A stretch of 64,000 bases of DNA, from positions 62,001 to 126,000 of IMG/VR virus record IMGVR_UViG_3300037010_003311; one strand, given 5' to 3'. A model generated the notes under the pieces. That model did not search any database. It was not told where the DNA came from and saw only the letters and a program-made list of their open reading frames with translations. Positions 3,961 to 30,271 of this stretch are shown piece by piece; within the stretch, counting starts at the first letter, position 1, and each line of letters begins with the position of its first letter. A program made the translations under genes and the position numbers.

Positions 3961-6900
3961 ATGATAATCCCAGAAGTAAAATCAAGTACAATAACAAACT
4001 CAGTTGCACTTAAAAGTGTCGAATTTAGTATTACTAATAATGAGGAAGAGATTAAAAAATTGATGGGGATCTTAACATACGATCTCTACAAAAATAAACC
4101 AGGTGCTGTAATCAGAGAGCTTAGTACTAACTGTATTGATGCTCATAAGCTTGTGGCTAATGAATTAAAGTCCGGGCATATTGGATCAAAAACACCATTT
4201 GCTATCATACTCCCAAGTGATTATAATAATAACTTTTTAACTATCCGCGATTTTGGACCAGGGTTAACAGAAGAAGAAATGTTTACTATTTATCCAACAT
4301 ATGGGAGCAGTACGAAAGAGAATACTAATGATTATACTGGTTGTTTAGGACTAGGTAGTAAATCGCCGCTAGCAATCAGTCCAGACTTCTTAGTTACAAG
4401 TTATAATAACAATAAGGTTGCCGTATATAAAACTCAGATGAACGATGGTAAAACAAACTTAGATCTTCGTTGGACGGATTCGGTAATTAATGCGGAAATT
4501 GTAGATGATGTTACAATTGTAGATGATGTTACAATTGAACCAGAAGAGAATAAGCTTATTTTTAAAAATGATTATGCTCAATACTTCTGGTATAAAAATC
4601 ATATCCAGATGAATATAACACATAATAATTTTTTAATGATTGCTATCAATCTTAAAAATTTTTATAATATTGGGAACACTTTATCATATATCTTTATTTT
4701 AAGAACTGCTGATACTATTAACCATTATAAATTGGTCTTTAATATTAATAAATTAAATGAAGATGATTTAGATCAGAATAAAACATTTAATTATTATATA
4801 ACCGACCAGGATGATAATAAAATATTTTCTGGTGCCGAATCTAATATTTTAGATTACGATGATCTATCAGTTGTTGAGCAAAAAAATTATCATAATAATT
4901 TTAGTTTCTTTGGTATTAATCTTTTAGATATTTTACCAGAATTATCGGATAATAATTTAACTGGTTATATCTTCGAAGAAATATTTAAACCAGACGAAAC
5001 CAAGTTCCGAATTTTAAACGACGAAGAAATAAATGCGTTGGATATTACCGAACGTAGGGAATACAAACATAAATTAAAAGAATACGAGCTAAAGGAAGAT
5101 GCTCGTATAAAGAATGCTTTATTATATAGTTCTAGTTTTAATTCTGGTCTTAAAATTGAAGTACCAATTAGTGAACAATATAAGTCACAATTACTGAATG
5201 AAATTGAAAGACAATTATTATTCTTTGAGACTAAACCATATATAATTGAGTATACTAATTTTGGACCAATGGTTCATGAGTTGGTGGCCTACCAAGAGGT
5301 ATTACAACAATATTTTATTGAGTTTGTTCCAAACTTTTACCTTTCTGAAAAAAAAATATTAGATGGTAATATTTGGTGGATGGATAAAAAATATTCTGAT
5401 TTTATAAGTGCATATTCTAAAGTTACAAATCGTGGAGAAAATCTTTTATTAGTACAAGGTAATGTGACTTACCCGATTGATCTCCAAGCTATGATAGATA
5501 CACTTAAATCGGCTAGTCGGGATCCAAGATTTGAGATTGAAAGCGAATACTTACCGATAGTAGAAGCTTTAAGAACTGGTTACTACAATAGTATAGATGT
5601 AACATCTTTCCGCAACTTTTTCTGTGGAGTAATGTTTTTTGATATTGGTGAGATAAATTTTCATCCATCTCGCGAAAGCTTAAATTATGATATAACTACT
5701 AGTTTAAAAATATTTGATAAAATTGTACAAGTAATAAAACTAGTAGGAACCAAAATGATGGATACATTAAATGCGTGCATAGATGATATACATTTGGCTG
5801 GGGTAAAATATAACATTGGTAATCAAACTAATCTGATGTTTGAAAATGATAAGTATTTTGGGCCAACGAGATTAAATCTTATTGGTAATATTTTTCCAAA
5901 AATTTTACTAAATATTACTCCGGAAAAAACGGTTCTTGAAAAATTAAAAGAATTATATAAACCAGGCGAAAAATTAGTACAACTTACTACTACGAAGCGA
6001 GACCCCGGTAGTGAAAATCCAGAAATTGGTAAAGTGACTTCTAATAGGGCCAGTAACTATAAGGTTGCGACAGGTTATAATTTTGAGAACGCTTTATTAA
6101 CCGCTCCATTATCCACAGTATTAGTATTTGTCGATTCTTGGAAGAGTCGAAAAAATTTTATGGAACACTATATCGACATTATAAATTATTATATTGGTAA
6201 AGCTAAAACCGAAGACCAGGAAGCAGTAGCGGACTATCACGAAAAGAATCCAGATACTCTATATGAAGACGCACCCAGAAAGCATTGTAAAGTAATAGGT
6301 TCATCTAGCATTCAATTGGTAGAATGTAAAGTGCAAGGGCTACCAACCCTAACATCTATTGATAATCCTAATTATGGTTTATTCCAACCTATTTTTATTA
6401 ACCGCGAGCACCTAAAAGATGAAAACATTAGTCCAGAAGATTTTATGAAAGCACTTGGTATGGCATCATATAATGATATATATCCTCGCGCATTTAATTT
6501 AAAAGATGAAATAGCTAATCTTATTAAAATTGGTAAAGCTTCTTTACCAGAAAAAACTAGATCTTCAACTGCTGGGATACAAAAGGCTATTGGTACTATT
6601 AAAATAGACACGATTGGAAAATCTTCGTTATCCTTCTCAGAGTCTAATCTTTATTATAAGAAAAAACTAAGGGATGAGCAATTGGTTGAGATATTTGATA
6701 AAATTTTGGCCGCAAATAGTAATCCAGATTTAACTTCTATCAATAAAACAATAATAATTCTACCTTTAAATAAACGTGGAGAACGTACCAAAATTAATCA
6801 CCAATTCTTTAATTTGTATAATCATGAGAATCATAGTAGCGAAATTTATAACTTAATGTTAGTAAGTAAGTTTGATTCTTTCGCTACTAGACCAGATGGC

Positions 6901-8022
6901 GCTAATAATAATCATTATGTAATTAGCATTAATGAAAATATGTTTGAACAGGTGCGTGATGAATTAAATGTTCTAGCTAATAATACAAAGTATCTGGCTG
7001 GAGGTATTAAGATTTTAGATATTAATGCACCGGAAACGATTGATGTATTTTTTGATCATATCGTTAAAACATATAGCAAAAAGGTTATTGATATTACTCA
7101 AGTTGGTGAAATCATGATTGATCCACGTTATATTTATAATAGGTTAAATACTCATTTAAATAAAATATTTACTAATATCACGGAATATGAAAATTTTAAA
7201 CATAATCCATATCCTAGGCTGATAAAAGAATTTTACTTTTCTTGGTATGTATTGCATAATACTGTTTTAAATAACGAACAATCGCAGTTAAATAGACATA
7301 CGACTCTAATTCTGAAAATTTTCTTATATAAAGCTTCGGATATTGCTTTACCTCAAGAAATAATAAATAATATCACATTTGATATATATACTAAATCTAT
7401 ATATGGTTCTAATAAAAACAGAACATTAATTTTAGAACATATATTAAAAAAGTATAATGAAATCAAACCAAAATTTATTCAAATCTCGAATAATAATATA
7501 TTTGATTTAAATCGTTTGGAATATAATAGTTCCGGTATTAATAAAAATGAGTATAAGTACCCATTATTGAATAATATTCTACATGTTATTAGTAATAAAT
7601 CAATACTTGACCTTAAAAAGAATAATACAAATTTTGATAAATTGGTCAATCGGTTTGAAAAAATTAACCCGAATATTTATCGTAACGTAGAAAATGTTTT
7701 AACTAACTATCTAAAAGTATATGTTGAGGATTTCATGAATATCGAACACAATATAAATTTTTTAGATTTTGATAAAACCGGAACATTACTAAGTAATGGG
7801 GAAATGCAATATAAAATACTAGCTAGTACTTCGATTAACCGATTACAGAATCAAGAGACTAAAAATAAAAAATTGAAGAGTTTAATCTTTGGGAAGGAAT
7901 ATAAAAAGCAAAAACAACTAGCAATGAAAGTAATTGCCGACATGTATGAAGAAGTTGTTGAACAAACCGATCAAGAATGTAGTATCCAAAGCGGGGACAG
8001 TTGCAGCACATCTGCTGCATAA
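3961..8022 (+). CDS. rIIA: rIIA-like protein with N-terminal GHKL (HSP90-like) ATPase
   Basis: LYKNKPGAVIRELSTNCIDAH, IRDFGPGL, YGSSTKENTNDYTGCLGLGSKSP; later YPID and GEINFHPSRESLNY motifs. Confidence 0.85.
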   Translation: MIIPEVKSSTITNSVALKSVEFSITNNEEEIKKLMGILTYDLYKNKPGAVIRELSTNCIDAHKLVANELKSGHIGSKTPFAIILPSDYNNNFLTIRDFGPGLTEEEMFTIYPTYGSSTKENTNDYTGCLGLGSKSPLAISPDFLVTSYNNNKVAVYKTQMNDGKTNLDLRWTDSVINAEIVDDVTIVDDVTIEPEENKLIFKNDYAQYFWYKNHIQMNITHNNFLMIAINLKNFYNIGNTLSYIFILRTADTINHYKLVFNINKLNEDDLDQNKTFNYYITDQDDNKIFSGAESNILDYDDLSVVEQKNYHNNFSFFGINLLDILPELSDNNLTGYIFEEIFKPDETKFRILNDEEINALDITERREYKHKLKEYELKEDARIKNALLYSSSFNSGLKIEVPISEQYKSQLLNEIERQLLFFETKPYIIEYTNFGPMVHELVAYQEVLQQYFIEFVPNFYLSEKKILDGNIWWMDKKYSDFISAYSKVTNRGENLLLVQGNVTYPIDLQAMIDTLKSASRDPRFEIESEYLPIVEALRTGYYNSIDVTSFRNFFCGVMFFDIGEINFHPSRESLNYDITTSLKIFDKIVQVIKLVGTKMMDTLNACIDDIHLAGVKYNIGNQTNLMFENDKYFGPTRLNLIGNIFPKILLNITPEKTVLEKLKELYKPGEKLVQLTTTKRDPGSENPEIGKVTSNRASNYKVATGYNFENALLTAPLSTVLVFVDSWKSRKNFMEHYIDIINYYIGKAKTEDQEAVADYHEKNPDTLYEDAPRKHCKVIGSSSIQLVECKVQGLPTLTSIDNPNYGLFQPIFINREHLKDENISPEDFMKALGMASYNDIYPRAFNLKDEIANLIKIGKASLPEKTRSSTAGIQKAIGTIKIDTIGKSSLSFSESNLYYKKKLRDEQLVEIFDKILAANSNPDLTSINKTIIILPLNKRGERTKINHQFFNLYNHENHSSEIYNLMLVSKFDSFATRPDGANNNHYVISINENMFEQVRDELNVLANNTKYLAGGIKILDINAPETIDVFFDHIVKTYSKKVIDITQVGEIMIDPRYIYNRLNTHLNKIFTNITEYENFKHNPYPRLIKEFYFSWYVLHNTVLNNEQSQLNRHTTLILKIFLYKASDIALPQEIINNITFDIYTKSIYGSNKNRTLILEHILKKYNEIKPKFIQISNNNIFDLNRLEYNSSGINKNEYKYPLLNNILHVISNKSILDLKKNNTNFDKLVNRFEKINPNIYRNVENVLTNYLKVYVEDFMNIEHNINFLDFDKTGTLLSNGEMQYKILASTSINRLQNQETKNKKLKSLIFGKEYKKQKQLAMKVIADMYEEVVEQTDQECSIQSGDSCSTSAA
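4498..4537 (+). repeat. 18-bp perfect tandem duplication inside rIIA
   Basis: ATTGTAGATGATGTTACA x2 + ATTG, encoding IVDDVTIVDDVTI. Confidence 0.95.
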
Positions 8023-8131: not shown

Positions 8132-8212
8132 CAATTAGTATCTTAGGAAGCAGAAAATTATTTCAGTATTTTAAGATGCTAAAAATAAAGAAAAGAGTAA
8201 AGGAGAAAACGA

Positions 8213-8815
8213 ATGGCCATAGATTCCAGGAAACAAACTGAAGCGGTACCAACAACAATACTAAAACCGGTAAAGTTGATAACTAGTACTCCATTAGATA
8301 TTTGCTCAAGAGCGATTAGAACTTGTTGGCAAAGTCATGAAAAATCTGATTCTGAACAAGTAATGTATTGTGAAAAGTGTAATCACTACTATACTGATTT
8401 AGATACTAAAAAGTGCAACTGTGGTAATACGATTTTAATCAAGCAAACATATTGTGGTGAAAAAGATAAAGAACTCATCGATCGGATTGGTAATAAATTT
8501 AAGCATGCTAGTACTTTAGAACACTTGATTATGACATTTAGTATTGATTTTGATTTAATGGCATATATGCAGATGAATGAAAATAAATACATAGTATATA
8601 ACTTTCCAGTATTAACTTTAAATTTACGATCGTTTATAGATATGCTAGAACTTGGGTTAAAACATCCTAGTGTATATGAGGCTAGAAATAAAAGCTTGCT
8701 ACAAATGTATAACGTTTTTCCAAAAGACTATAAATATTTGGTCGAGGAACGGATTTCACATTTAATAGGGCTTCTAGCTTTTAATACTAAACCAGAAGGG
8801 GTTACAAATGCCTAA
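8213..8815 (+). CDS. ThyX-like protein, part A (N-terminal motifs, Zn-ribbon insertion)
   Basis: TPLDICSRAIRTCWQSHEKSD and GEKDKELIDRIGNKFKHASTLEHL closely match the Campylobacter-type ThyX N-terminus; CEKC...CNC insertion; lacks RHR motif. Confidence 0.75.
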   Translation: MAIDSRKQTEAVPTTILKPVKLITSTPLDICSRAIRTCWQSHEKSDSEQVMYCEKCNHYYTDLDTKKCNCGNTILIKQTYCGEKDKELIDRIGNKFKHASTLEHLIMTFSIDFDLMAYMQMNENKYIVYNFPVLTLNLRSFIDMLELGLKHPSVYEARNKSLLQMYNVFPKDYKYLVEERISHLIGLLAFNTKPEGVTNA

Positions 8816-9428
8816 TCAAATTGAAAGAGTTGAGTTAGAGTATTCTAATTTTGATAAAGTTGAACCAGTAGTTCAAGATTTCTTACCTCATATAGCAGGC
8901 GAACATATTTTTTATACATTTCGTATATTTAATATAAGTAGAGCGCTATTGCAGGAAGTGGTAAGGCACCAACATCTTATTTCATACTCAGTTAAAAGTT
9001 CTAGATATACACTTAAAGAAGTAAAAGCCCATCCCGGGTTCGAGAAACTGTTTACTACTTATCTAGAAGATGGTAAAAAAGAATTTGATATAGATTCTGC
9101 TAGAGAAGCAGCCAAAGAGTTCCTGTTATTTGATGGGGATGATTTAGTTGATAAGTACAGCATTTATGCTTTAGAGAATCTACGAAAAGCACTTGTAGCT
9201 GGTATTTCAAATGATCATGCTAAATATTGTTTACCAGAAAACTATAAAACTGAAGTTCGTATGACAATTAATGTTAATGCTTTAAATAATTTTATCACTC
9301 TTCGTAGTAATACCGCAGCATTATGGGAAGCACAATTACTAGCAAAAGATCTTTTGGCAGCAATACCAGAACACCATTTGCATCGGTTTACGGCTTGTCA
9401 CTCAAATCCAGAAATGTCTAAAAAATAA
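8808..9428 (+). CDS. thyX: Flavin-dependent thymidylate synthase, part B (catalytic motifs)
   Basis: ISRALLQEVVRHQHLISYSVKSSRYT, AKYCLPENYKTE, TINVNALNNFITLRS, ALWEAQ. Confidence 0.85.
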   Translation: MPNQIERVELEYSNFDKVEPVVQDFLPHIAGEHIFYTFRIFNISRALLQEVVRHQHLISYSVKSSRYTLKEVKAHPGFEKLFTTYLEDGKKEFDIDSAREAAKEFLLFDGDDLVDKYSIYALENLRKALVAGISNDHAKYCLPENYKTEVRMTINVNALNNFITLRSNTAALWEAQLLAKDLLAAIPEHHLHRFTACHSNPEMSKK

Positions 9429-9443: not shown

Positions 9444-10064
9444 ATGAAATGGATAATTGATAAAAGTTTTAGTTTTTGTTACGGTCATCGGGTTCATAAC
9501 CAAAGACTGGATACTAAGTTTACTGAGTCAGGAGATGCGTGTTTAGCATGTAGACACCTGCATGGCCATGAGGGTCTAGTAAAAGTATTTTTAACTGGAC
9601 CATCGAGTAATGTTAAAACTACAGGAATGGTTACAGATTTTAAACATCTAGGCTGGTTTAAAAATTTTATTGATGATACGCTTGATCATAAATTCATTAT
9701 GGATTTACGAGATCCATTATTCCCATCAGAATTTCCGCTAGTTTGTACACCAACTGGCAAATTAGTACTTGACCGGGTGCATATAATGGACCAAGGGTTT
9801 ATGATTCCAGATCTAACATATATTAAAAATATTATTAATAATGATGAAGTTCTAAAATCGCAAGCGGAAATTGATGCTATTTTTGAAAAATATGAGGGTG
9901 CAGTATTTGTCGATTTCGTACCAACTTCCGAAAATCTTGCAGCCTGGTTATTAAAAGTATGTCAGGAAAAAATGAAAGGTTTAACCGATGTTCAAGTAGT
10001 AGCGGTTGAGTATTGGGAAACTCCAAAATCACATTGTCGGGTACAAGCCACGGACTTAATCTAA
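9444..10064 (+). CDS. queD: 6-carboxy-tetrahydropterin synthase (QueD/PTPS family)
   Basis: FCYGHRV, CRHLHGHEG, MVTDF, LDHKF, PTSENLA, YWETPKSHC. Confidence 0.92.
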   Translation: MKWIIDKSFSFCYGHRVHNQRLDTKFTESGDACLACRHLHGHEGLVKVFLTGPSSNVKTTGMVTDFKHLGWFKNFIDDTLDHKFIMDLRDPLFPSEFPLVCTPTGKLVLDRVHIMDQGFMIPDLTYIKNIINNDEVLKSQAEIDAIFEKYEGAVFVDFVPTSENLAAWLLKVCQEKMKGLTDVQVVAVEYWETPKSHCRVQATDLI

Positions 10065-10339: not shown

Positions 10340-11332
10340 ATGCTAAAGTTTATTAGTATAAAAGATCCCCATTTAAGTTTAGGTTTTCAGAATCGGCTTC
10401 GATACGATTACCAAAGTGATATTATGAATAAATTAAATTTTATTCGTAATTATGTAGCAGAGAATCAGGTTGACGCCATTTTATTAACTGGTGATATAAC
10501 TGATTCCAATTATGAACGAAAATGGTCATTTAAACAGTATGTAAAAAATAAGAGAGCATTCCAAGCTTTAAAAGGTAATGGATCTGATGATCATGTACAG
10601 CTATTAAGCTGTATTGGGAACCACGATATGTTTTTTGGTCTCGAAGATGGAAATGATACAGTGTTTGATGAACTGGTACGGGAAAATGTAATTCATAACA
10701 TTACTAATTACCCGAAAGGGTTTACGACACCAAATTCTAATAAAGTGGTAAAAGTATATGGTGTAGATTATTCAAGTAATAAAGAAACTATATTTGAAAA
10801 ACTAAATGTTATAAATAATGATAGTTTTATTAATACTCAATATTTTAAAATTGTAGTTATGCATAACAACCTTACACCGTTACCGGAAAGATTAACTGAA
10901 TTCACTTATGATGAGTTACAGGCTAAGTTTCCAAATATCAATATTTTTATTGGTGGTCACTATCATATAGGTTTTCCCTCGGTTCAAGTAAAAGGTACCT
11001 GGTTTATAAACAATTGGAACCTCACCAGAGTAGTTCGAGATTATGACGTCACTTTAGATCAGCATACGCCAGAGTTTGAAGAAATCACATTCGATGATAA
11101 TTTAAACTTGGTATCAGTAAAGACCATAAAATTGCCGTTTAAGACGTTTGAAGAAACTTTCGTCCCAAACGCAATTAACATTATCAAAAAATCTAAACAG
11201 GAAATTTTTGAATTTTTCCAAATAGATTTTGAAGAGATTGTTACAAAACAAACTGACTTAGAAATTCTAGAGCAGTTTGATTACGAACCAGAAATTATAC
11301 AACTAGCCTTACAATATCTAAATGGTGATTAA
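10340..11332 (+). CDS. sbcD: Mre11/SbcD-like metallophosphoesterase nuclease
   Basis: DPH, LTGDITD, GNHD, VMHN, GHYH motifs. Confidence 0.85.
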   Translation: MLKFISIKDPHLSLGFQNRLRYDYQSDIMNKLNFIRNYVAENQVDAILLTGDITDSNYERKWSFKQYVKNKRAFQALKGNGSDDHVQLLSCIGNHDMFFGLEDGNDTVFDELVRENVIHNITNYPKGFTTPNSNKVVKVYGVDYSSNKETIFEKLNVINNDSFINTQYFKIVVMHNNLTPLPERLTEFTYDELQAKFPNINIFIGGHYHIGFPSVQVKGTWFINNWNLTRVVRDYDVTLDQHTPEFEEITFDDNLNLVSVKTIKLPFKTFEETFVPNAINIIKKSKQEIFEFFQIDFEEIVTKQTDLEILEQFDYEPEIIQLALQYLNGD

Positions 11333-11388
11333 GTTGATAACAAAAAGGGCCATCACTGGTACAAAAGAATATATGGAACGAGGTAAAC

Positions 11389-13017
11389 ATGAAACTTATT
11401 AAAAGCTTCGATGAGGTGCTTTCTAAGGATGATATAATTAAATACCTTAGTGAGCGGGAAGACAATAGCATAACTAGCTGGGATCAAATACCTAGCCCAT
11501 TTATGTTTAAAGACATGCCTAAAGCGATTGCACTTTTTCAAAATGCTTTAGCAACTAACCAAAAAATTAAAATAGTTCACGATAGTGACGCTGATGGTTT
11601 AGGGACCTACCTTGAAAGTTGGCATTTCTTTTCCGCTTTCTATTATCGAAATTTTGAATTTGTAATAGTTGATCGGTCAGAGGGATACGGCCTATTACCT
11701 AAACATATAGAAGAGAATTGTTTGATTATAACTTCTGATAATGGAATAACTGCAAATCCTGCTTGCCAGCATGCAAAAACTGTAACTAACTGTCAGGTAA
11801 TTATAACTGACCATCACCAGGTGGATATGTTTTATGGTGTACCAGAAGCTGACGCTATAATTAACCCATGGGTACCAGGCGAAACATTTCCATTTAAAGA
11901 AATTAATGGGGCGTTTGTTTACTGGTTCTTTTTAAAAGCTATTCAAGAAACCTTCAATTCACAATTTGATATGAAGTCTTTTCTACCGGAATTGACACTT
12001 ACTACTATTTCCGACGTTATGCCACTTATACATATTAATCGATTTATAGTTAAGCAGGGGTTAAAGTATATGCTTACGTCTAACCGACGATGGGTACAAA
12101 CATTTATTAATACTCATAAGCTAACAGAAGTCCTAGCCGATGATCTAGCATTTAAAATAATCCCGAGTATTAACGTAACTAACCGATTAACGAAAGCTGA
12201 TGAATCGGCCCTCTTCTTAATACAGGAAGAATACATAGCTTCTAATCAATGGTTCGGGTATCTAAATAACTTAAATACCCAACGTAAAAAGATGCAGGAA
12301 TCATTACTTAAAACTATTGAAACTAAATATGCTAAATGGTTAGAGTTTGGTTTTATTATCATACCAGGAACTAAGGAAGATGGCTTTCATAAAGGTATAC
12401 TTGGTCCAACTGCTGGTAGATTAGCAGAACGTTATAATAAACCGGCATTGGTATTGATTAATAATGGTGACTATTATAGTGGCTCTGGTCGATCAGTAGG
12501 TGACGTTGATATATTATCTATAGTCAAGTCCAGTCCAAGTGTAGTACAGAATAAAACTGGTGGCCATAAAGTGGCATGTGGTGTAGCAGTAAATACCCAT
12601 GAACTTGGAAACTTTTGGAATCATTGCCAAATGGAAATTGCTAAAATTCCAGCCGAACAATTCGAAGAAACCGAAGCAGTTCTTGGTAAAATAAATATTC
12701 GAGATATTGATTTAGATCTTTATCACAAAATGAAAGAGTTTGAACCATTTGGTCAAAAATATGAAAGGCCGGAATTCTTAGTTCGGGGTAAAGTGAAAAA
12801 TGTGAAGAAGCTTGGTAAAGATGGAACTCATATGCGTTTCATTTTAGAAGATGGTTTGGGAGCTCAAATAAACTGCCTATTCTTTTTCGCTACCGAACCT
12901 ATTAAAGCCAATACAAACTATAGTTTAGTATGTACAATACAACATGATCTATTTAATGGAGCCGATGATGTATGTCTCTATGTTTCTTCAGTTGCTAAAT
13001 TTGAGGATGCCCTTTAG
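11389..13017 (+). CDS. recJ: RecJ-like ssDNA exonuclease (DHH/DHHA1)
   Basis: HDSDADG, TSDNG, TDHH, TISDVMPL, GSGRS, GGHKVACG, EPFGQ. Confidence 0.92.
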   Translation: MKLIKSFDEVLSKDDIIKYLSEREDNSITSWDQIPSPFMFKDMPKAIALFQNALATNQKIKIVHDSDADGLGTYLESWHFFSAFYYRNFEFVIVDRSEGYGLLPKHIEENCLIITSDNGITANPACQHAKTVTNCQVIITDHHQVDMFYGVPEADAIINPWVPGETFPFKEINGAFVYWFFLKAIQETFNSQFDMKSFLPELTLTTISDVMPLIHINRFIVKQGLKYMLTSNRRWVQTFINTHKLTEVLADDLAFKIIPSINVTNRLTKADESALFLIQEEYIASNQWFGYLNNLNTQRKKMQESLLKTIETKYAKWLEFGFIIIPGTKEDGFHKGILGPTAGRLAERYNKPALVLINNGDYYSGSGRSVGDVDILSIVKSSPSVVQNKTGGHKVACGVAVNTHELGNFWNHCQMEIAKIPAEQFEETEAVLGKINIRDIDLDLYHKMKEFEPFGQKYERPEFLVRGKVKNVKKLGKDGTHMRFILEDGLGAQINCLFFFATEPIKANTNYSLVCTIQHDLFNGADDVCLYVSSVAKFEDAL

Positions 13018-28834: not shown

Positions 28835-30271
28835 ATGTGTAGTTTTATGGTAATAAATGGTCCAATTGAAAAGGTAGTAAAATTTACTCCAGATCATATT
28901 AGCTTCGATGATGTTATCCAAGCATTACGTGTTAAAGGCAACCTGAATGATGATATTGATTTATTTATGTATAATCATAATCTGGGGGAATTACTACAAC
29001 TTACTGCTGCAGAATTACGAGCCACCAATGAACCAAAATTTGAATATATGGGTTCGGCTTATGAAAAGTTTACTAGAACACCAGAAGATTACGAACCGGA
29101 TGATATAGTTACTTTAGTAGCATTTAGTCGGTTGGCACCAGAGATGGAAGTTGATGCGAAACAAAACACCTTGTCACAACCATATTTAAATACCAAGTAT
29201 AAAACAATTACTATGGTACATGGGACTATCCCGAAAGCCGAAGAGTTCGTACCAGAGGTACAGGTGGATACCGATATTTTTATGCACCGTAGTTTTCAGG
29301 ATTGTATCAATTATACTGAACAGGTTGGTGGTAAGATTTCAGCGGTGCAAATACCTATGACTAAACTTAGTACTATATTATGGTATGATAATGGCTTAGG
29401 TAGATTCGAATATAAATCAATGGATGGAAAAGTTTGGATTGGTACAAACATTAATTTATTTAATCATTTTTATTATTGGGCTAAATCTTTTATGCTACAA
29501 CCTGCCCCTTATATACAACTAGTTTTTCCAAAAACTTTAATTCTTGCCAAGTCGCGTATAATTTCACTTTTTAGTGGTGGGTTAGATATAACTTGTAGTA
29601 CACTAAATGTAATAGAAACTAAACTTAAACAACGCTCACAATTAAAAAGTGTGGACTTATGGTACTTTGATTGGGGCACAAGAGCTTCAGCCGAAGAACA
29701 AGCAGCTGGGCAACGCTTTAAAGATAAATTGGAGAAAGATTTCGCTACCAACGGTAGCACAGCTACCGTTAATTATGAAGTTATCCCAACAGAAGGTATG
29801 TTTAGGAATATATTACAAGCATGTGATACAACAGTTCGGTTAACCGATAAAGATGCAACCGGGGCTGGACATCATGAAGCGGAAGCTGCAATTTCATATG
29901 TACCATACCGCAACCAGTTCCTATTAACTCTTGCGGCAGCTAAAGCCGAACAACTTTATCCAGGGGAAAATGTAACTATAGTTATAGGTGCAAATCTTAG
30001 TGAAGGAATGGTTTATTTAGATAATAGTGAATCATTTGTAGATGCTATTAATAAAACTATTAAGGTTGGTGGACAAAGAACTTATAATTTCGAAGTAGTT
30101 GCCCCATTCGTAAATAGAACTAAAACCGATATGGTAGCTGAATGCTTAAAACGTGGGTATGACCTTAGTACAGCGTTTAGTTGTTATTTTCCGGTTGATG
30201 GTAAAGAATGTGGTGTATGTGGTAGCTGTTTACTTAAACAAAGGGCGTTAGAAAGAGGAGGAAATAAATAA
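28835..30271 (+). CDS. queC: Class II glutamine amidotransferase-QueC fusion (GAT-QueC)
   Basis: N-terminal Met-Cys (Ntn nucleophile); LFSGGLD, SYVPYRN, PFVNRTK, TAFSCY...CGVCGSCLLK. Confidence 0.9.
   Translation: MCSFMVINGPIEKVVKFTPDHISFDDVIQALRVKGNLNDDIDLFMYNHNLGELLQLTAAELRATNEPKFEYMGSAYEKFTRTPEDYEPDDIVTLVAFSRLAPEMEVDAKQNTLSQPYLNTKYKTITMVHGTIPKAEEFVPEVQVDTDIFMHRSFQDCINYTEQVGGKISAVQIPMTKLSTILWYDNGLGRFEYKSMDGKVWIGTNINLFNHFYYWAKSFMLQPAPYIQLVFPKTLILAKSRIISLFSGGLDITCSTLNVIETKLKQRSQLKSVDLWYFDWGTRASAEEQAAGQRFKDKLEKDFATNGSTATVNYEVIPTEGMFRNILQACDTTVRLTDKDATGAGHHEAEAAISYVPYRNQFLLTLAAAKAEQLYPGENVTIVIGANLSEGMVYLDNSESFVDAINKTIKVGGQRTYNFEVVAPFVNRTKTDMVAECLKRGYDLSTAFSCYFPVDGKECGVCGSCLLKQRALERGGNK

What the first reader, a model, noticed from the sequence alone, without database searches (positions are those of the whole stretch)
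8213..9428. ThyX divided between two overlapping paralogous genes, with a zinc ribbon and an altered RHR motif
Seen: gene A keeps the N-terminal ThyX motifs (RTCWQS, KHASTLEH), has a CxxC...CxC insertion and lacks RHR/SxRY. Gene B lacks that N-terminus but has RHQ-x8-SSRY (canonical RHR-x7-SxR) and the C-terminal motifs. Each retains a degenerate trace of the other's elements. They overlap by 8 nt in different frames and B has its own AAGGGG RBS. Established: ThyX is a homotetramer and fused two-domain forms exist. Inference: a heteromeric ThyX, possibly with changed substrate or regulation, co-transcribed with queD.
Basis: partly seen in the sequence, partly recalled or inferred. Interest (0 to 1): 0.7.

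Follow-up and report, generated by a model that had tools for sequence, protein, structure and literature searches.

The report
Split two-subunit phage thymidylate synthase ThyX
This phage's only thymidylate synthase gene (thyX) exists as two overlapping, conserved genes, each a ThyX copy missing what the other keeps, and they probably assemble into a mixed enzyme; in relatives a mobile HNH nuclease sits exactly between the two genes.

Summary
Gene A (8213-8815) and gene B (8808-9428) are both ThyX derivatives that overlap by 8 nt.

**Not an artefact.** Assemblies from two other samples cross the junction without indels. The pair recurs in at least five lineages. Both genes are under purifying selection (dN/dS 0.1-0.2).

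**What each gene is.**
- A is the ThyX N-terminus, plus a Zn-ribbon loop, plus a ThyX-like C-terminal tail. The RHR...SxRY motif and the helical domain are deleted.
- B is ThyX minus helices alpha1-alpha2. Its motif reads RHQ, with one extra residue.

**Complementary active-site residues.**
- A keeps the residues that one neighbouring subunit lends to a ThyX site: H. pylori S50 and R165.
- B keeps those of the other two subunits: R74/H75/R174 and R66/S84/R86/Y87.
- An A2B2 tetramer would therefore have two complete sites.

**Evidence that A and B work together.**
- A complex model scores 0.91 against 0.01 for the best control.
- Two relatives fuse A and B into one protein.

- In two lineages an HNH endonuclease is fused to A, between A and B.
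- A syntenic sister phage has an intact thyX at this locus.
- The distal part of B groups with different intact ThyX lineages, while the junction-proximal part is shared among split loci.

This looks like a gene in pieces made by a mobile cassette, with the nuclease lost in this window. Enzyme activity is untested. The neighbouring queD reflects synteny only.

The parts
8200..8205 (+). AAGGAG ribosome-binding site of gene A
   Evidence: Read directly from the sequence. It lies 7 nt before the ATG at 8213.
8213..8815 (+). Gene A: 200-aa degenerate ThyX pseudo-subunit (A-type)
   Evidence: ORF. Pfam Thy1 E 8e-8 over profile positions 2-74. AF2 model pLDDT 81, pTM 0.74; best PDB match is H. pylori ThyX, TM 0.55. 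dN/dS 0.13 against L020.
8270..8353 (+). A residues 20-47: ThyX strand beta1 and helix alpha1 (RTCWQS...KSDS)
   Evidence: phmmer alignment to H. pylori ThyX residues 9-30.
8354..8455 (+). A residues 48-81: putative Zn-ribbon loop insertion (CxxC...CxC)
   Evidence: Absent from other A-types. Present in intact ThyX P0004-6 and P0124 at the same loop. Modelled as beta-hairpins. dN/dS 0.15. Pfam hit sub-threshold.
8456..8545 (+). A residues 82-111: helix alpha2, KHASTLEH (H98, S100 = H. pylori H48, S50) and strand beta3
   Evidence: phmmer alignment to H. pylori ThyX residues 32-62. H98, S100 and H104 are invariant in A-types.
8546..8770 (+). A residues 112-186: ThyX-C-terminus-like tail (strand beta4, N137-x-R139 = H. 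pylori N163/R165, two helices). The RHR...SxRY motif and helical domain are deleted before it.
   Evidence: hhalign of the tail alone against a ThyX profile: probability 92.8%, E 4e-7. N137 and R139 invariant in all A-types. dN/dS 0.10. phmmer against 1.8e9 proteins finds only A-types.
8796..8801 (+). AAGGGG ribosome-binding site of gene B, inside gene A
   Evidence: Read directly from the sequence.
8808..8815 (+). 8-nt overlap of A stop and B start (translational-coupling type)
   Evidence: The same overlap occurs in L020. The overlap is 4 nt in L005, 1 nt in L014 and 11 nt in L016. Confirmed by contigs of other samples.
8808..9428 (+). Gene B: 206-aa catalytic ThyX subunit lacking helices alpha1-alpha2 (B-type)
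   Evidence: Pfam Thy1 E 1.5e-27, profile positions 55-185. H. pylori ThyX residues 51-207, E 5e-31. dN/dS 0.17.
8808..8900 (+). B residues 1-31: short replacement N-terminus (beta1-like strand plus linker), shared among split loci
   Evidence: Alignment of B-types. Residues 11-29 lie in the predicted A-B interface. dN/dS 0.06.
8901..9017 (+). B residues 32-70: junction-proximal block with derived states shared by B-types, including the altered ThyX motif R53-H54-Q55-H56...S64-S65-R66-Y67 (8964-9008)
   Evidence: 85-90% identical between window and the L005/L019/L015 B-types, against 61-71% to intact ThyX. RHQHLISYS is identical in six lineages.
9018..9425 (+). B residues 71-206: distal ThyX body (helical domain, strand beta4, R166 = H. 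pylori R174) of 'local allele' ancestry
   Evidence: 39-46% identical to other B-types but 55% to intact P0122/P0123/P0137. The tree places it inside an intact-ThyX clade (99/92). The AU test rejects B-type monophyly, p 0.013.
9444..10064 (+). queD-like 6-pyruvoyl-tetrahydropterin synthase. A neighbour, probably in the same transcript, not part of the enzyme.
   Evidence: Pfam PTPS E 4e-25. Lies 15 nt after B, with no terminator-like site. Adjacency is not conserved in L014, L016 or L020.

Best explanation
**What it is.** Genes A and B encode the two subunit types of a heteromeric flavin-dependent thymidylate synthase, a 'thyX in pieces'.
- B is the catalytic subunit. It carries the ThyX motif, the dUMP-binding residues and R174, but lacks helices alpha1-alpha2.
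- A is a slimmed pseudo-subunit. It has lost the motif and the helical domain. It keeps the ThyX core and the residues that a neighbouring subunit lends to the FAD site: H. pylori H48/S50 and N163/R165.

**How it would work.** In a ThyX-like tetramer of composition A2B2, each of two active sites would be built from B (RHR-type motif, R174), a second B (R66, S84, R86, Y87) and A (S50, R165). The other two sites would be dead. Translation is probably coupled through the 8-nt overlap.

**How it arose.** The arrangement belongs to a cassette whose junction carries an HNH homing-type endonuclease in relatives. The cassette has ended up in different thyX backgrounds. In this window the nuclease has been lost or was never present.

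**Shown.** Homology of both genes to ThyX, the residue pattern, conservation and purifying selection, fusion in relatives, the HNH at the junction, the intact allele at the same locus, and the mosaic ancestry of B.

**Inferred.** Physical assembly, stoichiometry, two-site catalysis, dTMP as the product, and homing as the means of spread.
For: 1. **Both genes are ThyX derivatives**.
2. **The residue roles are complementary.**
   - The roles come from the review PMC6514825. Subunit 'A' supplies RHR 74-76 and R174. Subunit 'B' supplies S50 and R165. Subunit 'C' supplies R66, V82, S84, R86 and Y87.
   - Mapping by the printed alignments gives, for gene B: R45, R53, H54, V62, S64, R66, Y67 and R166, with N157 in place of R165.
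   - For gene A it gives S100 and R139, with G148 in place of R174 and no motif.
   - Across the family, N-x-R and H-x-S are invariant in all 8 A-types. The R165 position is N, N, R, R, R, N, N, S in the B-types.
3. **The A/B pair recurs in five or more lineages and two kinds of phage genome**. dN/dS is 0.06-0.31 in every part.
4. **Rosetta-stone fusions exist.** P0240 (379 aa, in a syntenic phage) and P0242 (385 aa) join A and B in one chain.
5. **The complex model supports binding.** For A2B2 plus 2 FAD, ipSAE is 0.91/0.91/0.90 against a best control of 0.01. The mark was reached by 58 of 80 solved complexes and by 2 of 110 mismatched pairs. The runs agree in at least 91% of contacts and the partner pLDDT is 82. 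The interface joins A 100-104/137 to B 53-68.
6. **No other thymidylate synthase.** There is no ThyA and no further Thy1 hit in the 227-kb record.
7. **Mobile-cassette origin.**
   - HNH_3 is fused to A in L005/L019 and L014, exactly between A and B. That domain has dN/dS 0.16.
   - Sister phage L029 has an intact 312-aa thyX between the same rIIA-like and queD genes.
   - B residues 32-70 are shared among split loci, while B 71-198 nests in three different intact-ThyX clades. The AU test gives p 0.013.
Against: - No biochemical data exist.
- The complex score may partly be 'memory' of solved ThyX homotetramers, and my own alignments were used.
- The FAD ligands were not scored.
- The third Arg of RHR is Gln or Thr in all B-types, so flavin binding or chemistry may differ.
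- R165 is still present in three B-types.
- A tree of whole B sequences gave weak B-type monophyly (63/90). The mosaic therefore rests on the segment analysis.
- Third-codon-position identity does not show a recent transfer.
- The window tail shows no detectable HNH remnant, so nuclease loss here is inference.
- The record is only 81% complete, so another thymidylate synthase could lie in the missing part.
Confidence: 0.6

Rival explanations
1. Fragment complementation. The N-terminal part of A (helices alpha1-alpha2, HxSxxEH) simply replaces the piece missing from B. One A plus one B would rebuild one ThyX protomer, and (AB)4 would be a normal four-site enzyme. The A tail and the B N-terminus would act only as assembly tails, as in Aeh1 NrdA-a/NrdA-b.
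For: A 20-111 plus B 32-190 together tile a whole Campylobacter-phage ThyX. The precedent is the mobE-split NrdA (PMC3045599).
Against: - A keeps its own strands beta1, beta3 and beta4 and its C-terminal helices. It is modelled as a compact ThyX-like fold on its own, with pTM 0.74.
- The FAD-contact residues N137/R139 in the tail are invariant in all A-types while the same position drifts in B.
- Strand beta3 is present in both proteins.
- The A2B2 model places A as a separate pseudo-subunit.
Confidence: 0.15
2. B alone is the working thymidylate synthase, as a homotetramer. A is a decaying leftover of the disrupted gene, or a regulator, or in relatives just the N-terminal extension of the nuclease.
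For: B carries every dUMP-contacting residue and most of the Thy1 profile. A has no ThyX motif.
Against: - B lacks about 35 N-terminal residues, including the H48/S50 positions, and in this window also R165.
- A is retained next to B in every lineage, with or without the nuclease, with dN/dS about 0.1 including its tail.
- A and B are fused in P0240 and P0242.
- The binding model scores 0.91 against 0.01 for the best control.
Confidence: 0.12
3. The A/B enzyme has changed chemistry: another pyrimidine substrate, another one-carbon product or another flavin. This could be linked to DNA modification in a phage that also encodes 7-deazaguanine pathway genes.
For: The RHR third Arg is Gln (Thr in L016) with a one-residue insertion in all B-types. 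The phage encodes QueD, two QueC-like proteins and FolE. ThyX homologues with other substrates are known (my own knowledge, not checked here).
Against: All residues listed as dUMP contacts are kept in B. No other thymidylate synthase is found in the record. The queD adjacency is not conserved across split loci.
Confidence: 0.1
4. Assembly or sequencing artefact: a frameshift error splits one ORF. Alternatively, an intron or intein interrupts a single thyX.
For: The two ORFs abut in different frames.
Against: - Independent contigs from two other samples cross the junction without indels.
- The same two-gene layout occurs in L020, L005, L019, L014 and L016.
- There is no Rfam match, including group I/II introns, at E up to 1 in L001 and L005.
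- Even read through, the product would be two partial ThyX copies, not one ThyX.
- An intein would be in frame and without a stop.
Confidence: 0.01

Closest known systems
Canonical homotetrameric ThyX / FDTS (nearest solved: Helicobacter pylori ThyX, PDB 3AH5 and 3N3Y)
   Same: Same fold and family for both genes. The active-site logic is the same: a site built from three subunits (PMC6514825). All dUMP-contact residues are present in B.
   Different: - There are two different chains instead of four identical ones.
- A lacks the ThyX motif and the helical domain.
- B lacks helices alpha1-alpha2 and, in this window, R165.
- The motif reads RHQ plus one extra residue.
- Only two of four sites could be complete.
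- A carries a Zn-ribbon loop.
Aeromonas phage Aeh1 nrdA split by the mobE homing endonuclease ('genes in pieces'; Crona et al. 2010, PMC3045599)
   Same: In both cases an essential nucleotide-metabolism gene of a large phage is cut into two ORFs at the site of a free-standing endonuclease. Both also have extra tails at the break, and reassembly into a hetero-oligomer (predicted here, shown there).
   Different: - Here the inner 'tails' are themselves ThyX-like, so A is a pseudo-subunit and not just a fragment.
- About 20 residues around strand beta3 are present in both products.
- The nuclease is HNH_3 and fused in frame to A in relatives. It is absent from this window.
- Some relatives have re-fused the pieces.
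Two-domain (internally duplicated) ThyX proteins, e.g. of Chloroflexi, and long viral Thy1 proteins
   Same: Two ThyX-derived modules act in one unit. P0240 and P0242 are such fusions within this very family. The literature notes duplicated ThyX as uncharacterised (PMC3224940). ESM Atlas holds viral Thy1 clusters of 331-468 aa.
   Different: I could not obtain those sequences. Whether they show the same reciprocal deletions and residue complementation is unknown. In this window the modules are separate genes.
Intact ThyX of syntenic sister phages (P0246 in L029) and of Campylobacter phages (Eucampyvirinae: PC5, CP220)
   Same: L029 has the same locus, between the rIIA-like gene and queD. These proteins are 40-74% identical to the matching parts of A and B.
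   Different: They are single genes of 212-312 aa with canonical RHR and N-x-R.

Membership tests
ThyX / flavin-dependent thymidylate synthase (Pfam PF02511 Thy1) | Thy1 domain above Pfam's gathering score | tested here: met
   A scores 32.8 bits and B 97.1 bits against a cut-off of 24.8. Each covers only part of the profile: positions 2-74 for A and 55-185 for B.
ThyX / flavin-dependent thymidylate synthase (Pfam PF02511 Thy1) | ThyX motif RHR-x7-S-x-R(Y) | tested here: not met
   A has no motif. B reads RHQ-x8-SSRY, with the third Arg as Gln and one extra residue. The same holds in all B-types, with Thr in L016.
ThyX / flavin-dependent thymidylate synthase (Pfam PF02511 Thy1) | Complete set of FAD and dUMP contact residues within one polypeptide type (H. 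pylori S50, R66, R74, H75, R76, S84, R86, Y87, R165, R174) | tested here: not met
   The set is divided. A has S50 and R165. B has R66, R74, H75, S84, R86, Y87 and R174. R76 is in neither. The set is complete only for A and B together, apart from R76.
ThyX / flavin-dependent thymidylate synthase (Pfam PF02511 Thy1) | Homotetramer with four active sites | not testable with these tools
   Only a model exists. A binds B in an A2B2 prediction, 0.91 against 0.01 for the best control. The homotetramer of B was not modelled.
ThyX / flavin-dependent thymidylate synthase (Pfam PF02511 Thy1) | dUMP to dTMP with CH2H4folate, NADPH and FAD | not testable with these tools
Indirect support: this is the only thymidylate synthase candidate in the record.
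Homing-endonuclease-split phage gene ('gene in pieces', Aeh1 nrdA/mobE type) | Endonuclease gene located at the break between the two pieces | tested here: inconclusive
   Met in relatives: HNH_3 is fused to A in L005/L019 and L014. Not met in this window: no HNH_3 in the whole record and no remnant detectable in the A tail.
Homing-endonuclease-split phage gene ('gene in pieces', Aeh1 nrdA/mobE type) | Uninterrupted allele at the same locus in related genomes | tested here: met
   L029 has the order rIIA-like gene, intact 312-aa thyX, queD, RecJ-like gene, RNase H gene. This is the same order as in the window, L005 and L015.
Homing-endonuclease-split phage gene ('gene in pieces', Aeh1 nrdA/mobE type) | Element-proximal sequence shared between occupied loci while distal gene sequence follows the local allele (co-conversion-like mosaic) | tested here: met
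   B 32-70 is 85-90% identical among split loci. B 71-195 is 39-46% identical among them but 55-74% identical to different intact ThyX. The AU test rejects monophyly of the distal parts, p 0.013. On the A side (residues 20-111) the identities are uninformative.
Homing-endonuclease-split phage gene ('gene in pieces', Aeh1 nrdA/mobE type) | Endonuclease cuts the uninterrupted allele and spares its own | not testable with these tools
   No assay is possible. The idea that the shared RHQ-plus-one-residue variant is the immune target site is speculation.
Group I/II intron or intein within thyX | Intron RNA structure, or an in-frame intein without a stop | tested here: not met
   No Rfam match at E up to 1 in L001 and L005. 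A ends at a stop and B starts in another frame.

The most novel reading that the evidence does not exclude
A mobile HNH cassette carries its own ThyX-derived 'spare parts': a C-terminus-like tail that turns the orphaned N-terminal piece into a pseudo-subunit, and a new N-terminus for the catalytic piece. The cassette can therefore invade the essential thyX of different phages without killing them. It converts a homotetrameric enzyme into an obligate A2B2 enzyme with half the active sites. The shared RHQ-plus-one-residue motif would be the nuclease-immune version of its target site. After the nuclease decays, the split (as in this window) or a re-fused two-domain gene (P0240) stays frozen in place.
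Probability: 0.3. Interest if true: 0.8.

Novelty: new variant of a known kind. Interest (0 to 1): 0.66.

Why it matters
ThyX is treated as a strictly homotetrameric enzyme whose sites are built from three identical chains.

**If the split form is functional, it would give three things.**
- A natural version in which the three roles are divided between two genes. This would be a ready-made dissection of which subunit contributes what.
- A case of subfunctionalisation at the level of interface roles.
- A test of whether half-of-sites ThyX is sufficient for a 227-kb phage.

**It would also be a second type of 'gene in pieces'.** The first is the Aeh1 ribonucleotide reductase. It would show how a selfish nuclease can permanently remodel an essential enzyme's quaternary structure, and how the scar persists after the nuclease is gone.

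**Practical point.** Automatic annotation calls such pairs 'thymidylate synthase' plus 'hypothetical protein', or treats them as broken genes.

Tried and rejected
- **Frameshift or assembly error:** rejected by contigs of other samples and by conserved layout.
- **Group I intron:** no Rfam match.
- **Intein:** rejected on frames and the stop codon.
- **Simple two-fragment split with nothing duplicated:** rejected. The A tail is ThyX-C-terminus-like, and both products carry the EH-beta3 segment.
- **Direct BLASTP of A against B:** nothing significant, E 1.8. Paralogy is visible only through profiles.
- **phmmer of the A tail against 1.84e9 representatives:** only A-types found, no intact ThyX.
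- **Scans of IMG/VR:**
  - With A alone: nothing.
  - With the A-type profile: only intact ThyX.
  - With the B motif: nothing.
  - With the tail profile: only intact ThyX whose C-termini share the LNLR / PxxYxYLxE signature.
- **Functional coupling to queD:** not supported.
- **Promoter and terminator scan:** fewer promoter-like sites than in shuffles and no terminator, so uninformative.
- **HNH remnants:**
  - Fused-protein linker against the HNH part of P0003: weak but colinear, E 0.034 and 0.40.
  - Window tail against the same: nothing.
- **Recent transfer:** third-position identity in B 53-70 is only modestly raised, at 50-67% over 18 sites, so no claim of recency is made.
- **Whole-length B tree:** gave weak monophyly. 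This is superseded by the segment analysis with closer intact sequences added.
- I removed those rows and resent the jobs.
Full report
**1. The observation**

The window is part of a 226,657-bp IMG/VR virus record, 81% complete. It comes from microbial-mat, sediment and vent metagenomes. The record is distantly related to Campylobacter phages.

- ORF A (8213-8815, 200 aa) and ORF B (8808-9428, 206 aa) lie on the + strand in different frames and overlap by 8 nt.
- AAGGGG lies 6 nt before the B start, and AAGGAG lies before the A start.
- Pfam Thy1 matches A residues 22-121 to profile positions 2-74 (E 8e-8). It matches B residues 32-186 to positions 55-185 (E 1.5e-27).

The junction is real.
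- Logan contigs from two other samples cover 8594-9295 with no difference and 8486-8861 with two substitutions and no gap. No indel is reported between 8200 and 9367.
- Near-identical A and B proteins occur in other assemblies (P0001, P0121).
- The closest relative, L020, repeats the 8-nt overlap.

**2. What each gene is**

The nearest solved structure for both is Helicobacter pylori ThyX (3AH5/3N3Y).

*Gene B.* Residues 30-199 align to H. pylori residues 51-207 (E 5e-31). B is therefore a ThyX lacking roughly the first 50 residues (helices alpha1-alpha2 and the HxS part of HxSxxEH). A short strand-like N-terminus stands in their place.

*Gene A.*
- Residues 26-47 and 82-112 align to H. pylori residues 9-30 and 32-62.
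- The 34 residues between them are a CxxC...CxC loop.
- A weak third segment aligns A 134-184 to H. pylori residues about 160-209.
- I tested that third segment separately. A profile of only the last ~70 residues of six A-type proteins aligns to the C-terminal columns of a 63-sequence ThyX profile, with probability 92.8% and E 4e-7.
- An AlphaFold2 model of A (pLDDT 81, pTM 0.74) has H. pylori ThyX as its best PDB match (TM 0.55, E 8e-8).
- A is therefore a full-length-derived ThyX from which the ThyX motif and the helical domain have been deleted. It is not merely an N-terminal fragment.

*The Zn-ribbon loop is not specific to the split form.*
- Intact phage ThyX proteins carry similar CxxC...CxxC inserts in the same loop (P0004-6, P0124, L021).
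- Other intact ones carry unrelated inserts there.
- Other A-types lack it.

**3. Conservation**

The pair is not unique to this window.

| Locus | Genome context | Form of A | Form of B |
|---|---|---|---|
| window, L020 | syntenic large phage | A with Zn ribbon (200-201 aa) | 205-206 aa, 8-nt overlap |
| L005/L006/L007, L019 | syntenic large phages | A domain plus C-terminal HNH_3 endonuclease (322 aa) | 193-207 aa |
| L014 | a 113-kb contig with different neighbours | A plus HNH_3 (319 aa) | 205 aa |
| L015 (P0240), and P0242 | L015 syntenic; P0242 context not examined | A and B fused in one chain (379 and 385 aa), no HNH | fused with A |
| L016-L018 | a ~42-kb phage with P22-type antirepressor, SSB and DnaJ genes | 143-aa A-type | 186-aa B-type, 11-nt overlap |

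- Nei-Gojobori dN/dS, window against L020: 0.13 for A (0.10 for the tail, 0.15 for the Zn ribbon) and 0.17 for B.
- L005 against L019: 0.06 for A' N-terminal part, 0.31 for A' tail, 0.16 for the HNH domain and 0.08 for B'.
- All parts are therefore maintained by selection.
- Among cultured phages in INPHARED, the A and B queries hit only single, intact ThyX genes.

**4. Complementary active-site residues**

A review of ThyX structures (PMC6514825) states that each site is formed by three subunits.
- One subunit gives the RHR motif (H. pylori 74-76) and R174.
- A second gives S50 and R165, which hydrogen-bond the FAD.
- A third gives R66, V82, S84, R86 and the lid Y87 for dUMP.

I mapped these positions using the residue-by-residue alignments printed.

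| H. pylori residue | Gene A | Gene B |
|---|---|---|
| S50 (and H48) | S100 (H98) | region absent |
| R66 | lost | R45 |
| R74, H75 | motif absent | R53, H54 |
| R76 | motif absent | Q55 |
| V82, S84, R86, Y87 | motif absent | V62, S64, R66, Y67 |
| N163, R165 | N137, R139 | N155, N157 (R165 lost) |
| R174 | G148 (lost) | R166 |

Across the family:
- H-x-S and N-x-R are invariant in all eight A-types.
- The R165 position in B-types reads N, N, R, R, R, N, N, S.
- R174 and the SxRY block are invariant in B-types.

In a D2 tetramer the three roles of a site fall on three different chains. Placing B at two diagonal positions and A at the other two gives two complete sites (B, A, B) and two dead ones. 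This step is my inference from the symmetry.

The pattern of which residues are frozen and which drift is what that model predicts. It is hard to explain if A were a relic.

**5. Binding model**

An A2B2 + 2 FAD prediction scored ipSAE 0.91, 0.91 and 0.90, against 0.01 for the best of three controls.
- The tool's mark was reached by 58 of 80 solved complexes and by 2 of 110 mismatched pairs.
- The runs agree in at least 91% of contacts, and the partner pLDDT is 82.
- The interface joins A 23-40, 100-110 and 123-137 with B 11-39, 53-68 and 149-155. The HxSxxEH and NxR regions of A thus sit against the motif loop of B.

The tool warns that solved homologous complexes can be recalled from memory and that my own alignments were used. 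This supports assembly and does not prove it. The two natural fusions are independent support.

**6. Origin: a mobile cassette**

- *A nuclease at the junction.* The HNH_3 nuclease sits exactly between the A domain and B in two lineages.
- *An intact allele at the same locus.* Sister phage L029 has the same gene order: rIIA-like gene, thyX, queD, an 82-aa gene, a 329-aa gene in the phosphoesterase position, RecJ-like gene, RNase H gene. Its thyX is intact at 312 aa.
- *B is a mosaic.*
  - Residues 32-70 are 85-90% identical between the window and the L005/L019/L015 B-types, against 61-71% to any intact ThyX. They share R-to-Q and a one-residue insertion (RHQHLISYS).
  - Residues 71-195 are only 39-46% identical between those B-types. 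They are 55% (window) or 68-74% (L005 group) identical to different intact ThyX proteins.
  - A tree of residues 71-198 places B-types in three well-supported positions among intact ThyX. An AU test rejects their monophyly (p 0.013, delta lnL 51).
  - The window's nearest intact relative by path, P0124, also has the Zn ribbon found in the window's A.
- *A short duplication.* About 20 residues (EH, strand beta3, start of the next helix) occur in both A and B when aligned to an intact relative.

Together these indicate a shared inner cassette: ThyX-C-like tail, HNH, new B N-terminus, proximal block. It is embedded in different thyX backgrounds. That is what nuclease-driven spread with co-conversion, or recombination with intact alleles, would produce.

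The closest precedent is the mobE-split nrdA of phage Aeh1, whose pieces reassemble by tails created at insertion (PMC3045599).

Limits:
- Third-position identities show no sign of recent transfer.
- Whether this window lost the HNH or never had it is unresolved.
- The linker of the fused P0240 has weak colinear similarity to both ends of the HNH part (E 0.034 and 0.40), hinting that the fusion arose by nuclease decay.

**7. Context and function**

The record has no ThyA and no other Thy1 match, so A/B is its only candidate thymidylate synthase.

queD follows 15 nt after B with no terminator-like site, so co-transcription is plausible. The adjacency is lineage synteny only. queD fits a scattered 7-deazaguanine gene set: two QueC-like genes and FolE, with no TGT hit.

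No evidence bears on a changed substrate. The loss of the third motif Arg leaves that open.

**8. Comparison and novelty**

- The genes belong to the ThyX superfamily by homology.
- Neither is a canonical ThyX. The defining motif is absent (A) or altered (B), and the residue set is split between them.
- Functionally I expect a ThyX-like enzyme.
- Searches of the paper library for ThyX with 'heterotetramer', 'homing endonuclease' or 'domain duplication' returned no description of a split or heteromeric ThyX. The only related note is that duplicated two-domain ThyX of Chloroflexi is uncharacterised.
- The ESM Atlas holds viral Thy1 clusters of 331-468 aa, and one with LAGLIDADG domains. Longer viral forms and mobile-element invasion of thyX therefore exist. 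I could not inspect them.

I rate this a new variant of known kinds (ThyX, and nuclease-split phage genes).

**Verdict**

- The heteromer interpretation is supported computationally.
- The origin is better explained by a mobile HNH cassette.
- Enzymology is untested.

Noticed in passing
window 3961-8022 (+): A 1353-aa ORF in which only the first ~165 residues match rIIA (PHROG 612, E 3e-53). The orthologue in L029 carries HATPase_c_3. The remaining ~1200 residues have no assignment. Orthologues of 1342-1390 aa precede thyX in all syntenic relatives.
   Followed up: partly
window 9444-10064 (+): The queD-like PTPS is 206 aa against a 121-position profile. It therefore carries about 80 residues of insertions. 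Orthologues of 200-209 aa occur in relatives.
   Followed up: no
window about 29558-30256 (+) (G000:91558-92256); also G000:3819-4499 and G000:47812-48366, both outside the window: Two QueC-like genes are present, one of them inside a 478-aa open frame. There is also a GTP cyclohydrolase I gene. PF01702 gives no TGT/DpdA match. This suggests a 7-deazaguanine pathway scattered over the genome, as in Campylobacter phages of the CP220 group.
   Followed up: partly
L020:2118-2774: The closest relative has an extra 218-aa ORF, with no Pfam hit, inserted between gene B and queD.
   Followed up: partly
A residues 48-81 (window 8354-8455); L008:4995-5768, L011:4995-5762, L021:759-1496: The loop after the CWQSxxKSD helix of phage and Campylobacterota-type ThyX is an insertion hot spot. 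Some intact proteins carry Zn ribbons there and others carry unrelated 20-40-residue inserts.
   Followed up: partly
window 10340-13017 (+): A calcineurin-like phosphoesterase (330 aa) is followed by a RecJ-like DHH/DHHA1/OB protein (542 aa). The order is conserved, with RNase H following, in all syntenic relatives.
   Followed up: no
L014:1-775 and L014:9623-10618: The third split-thyX locus lies in a 113-kb contig. Its neighbours include a HipA-like kinase gene and an Eco57I-type gene. This is a different genomic setting from the window.
   Followed up: no
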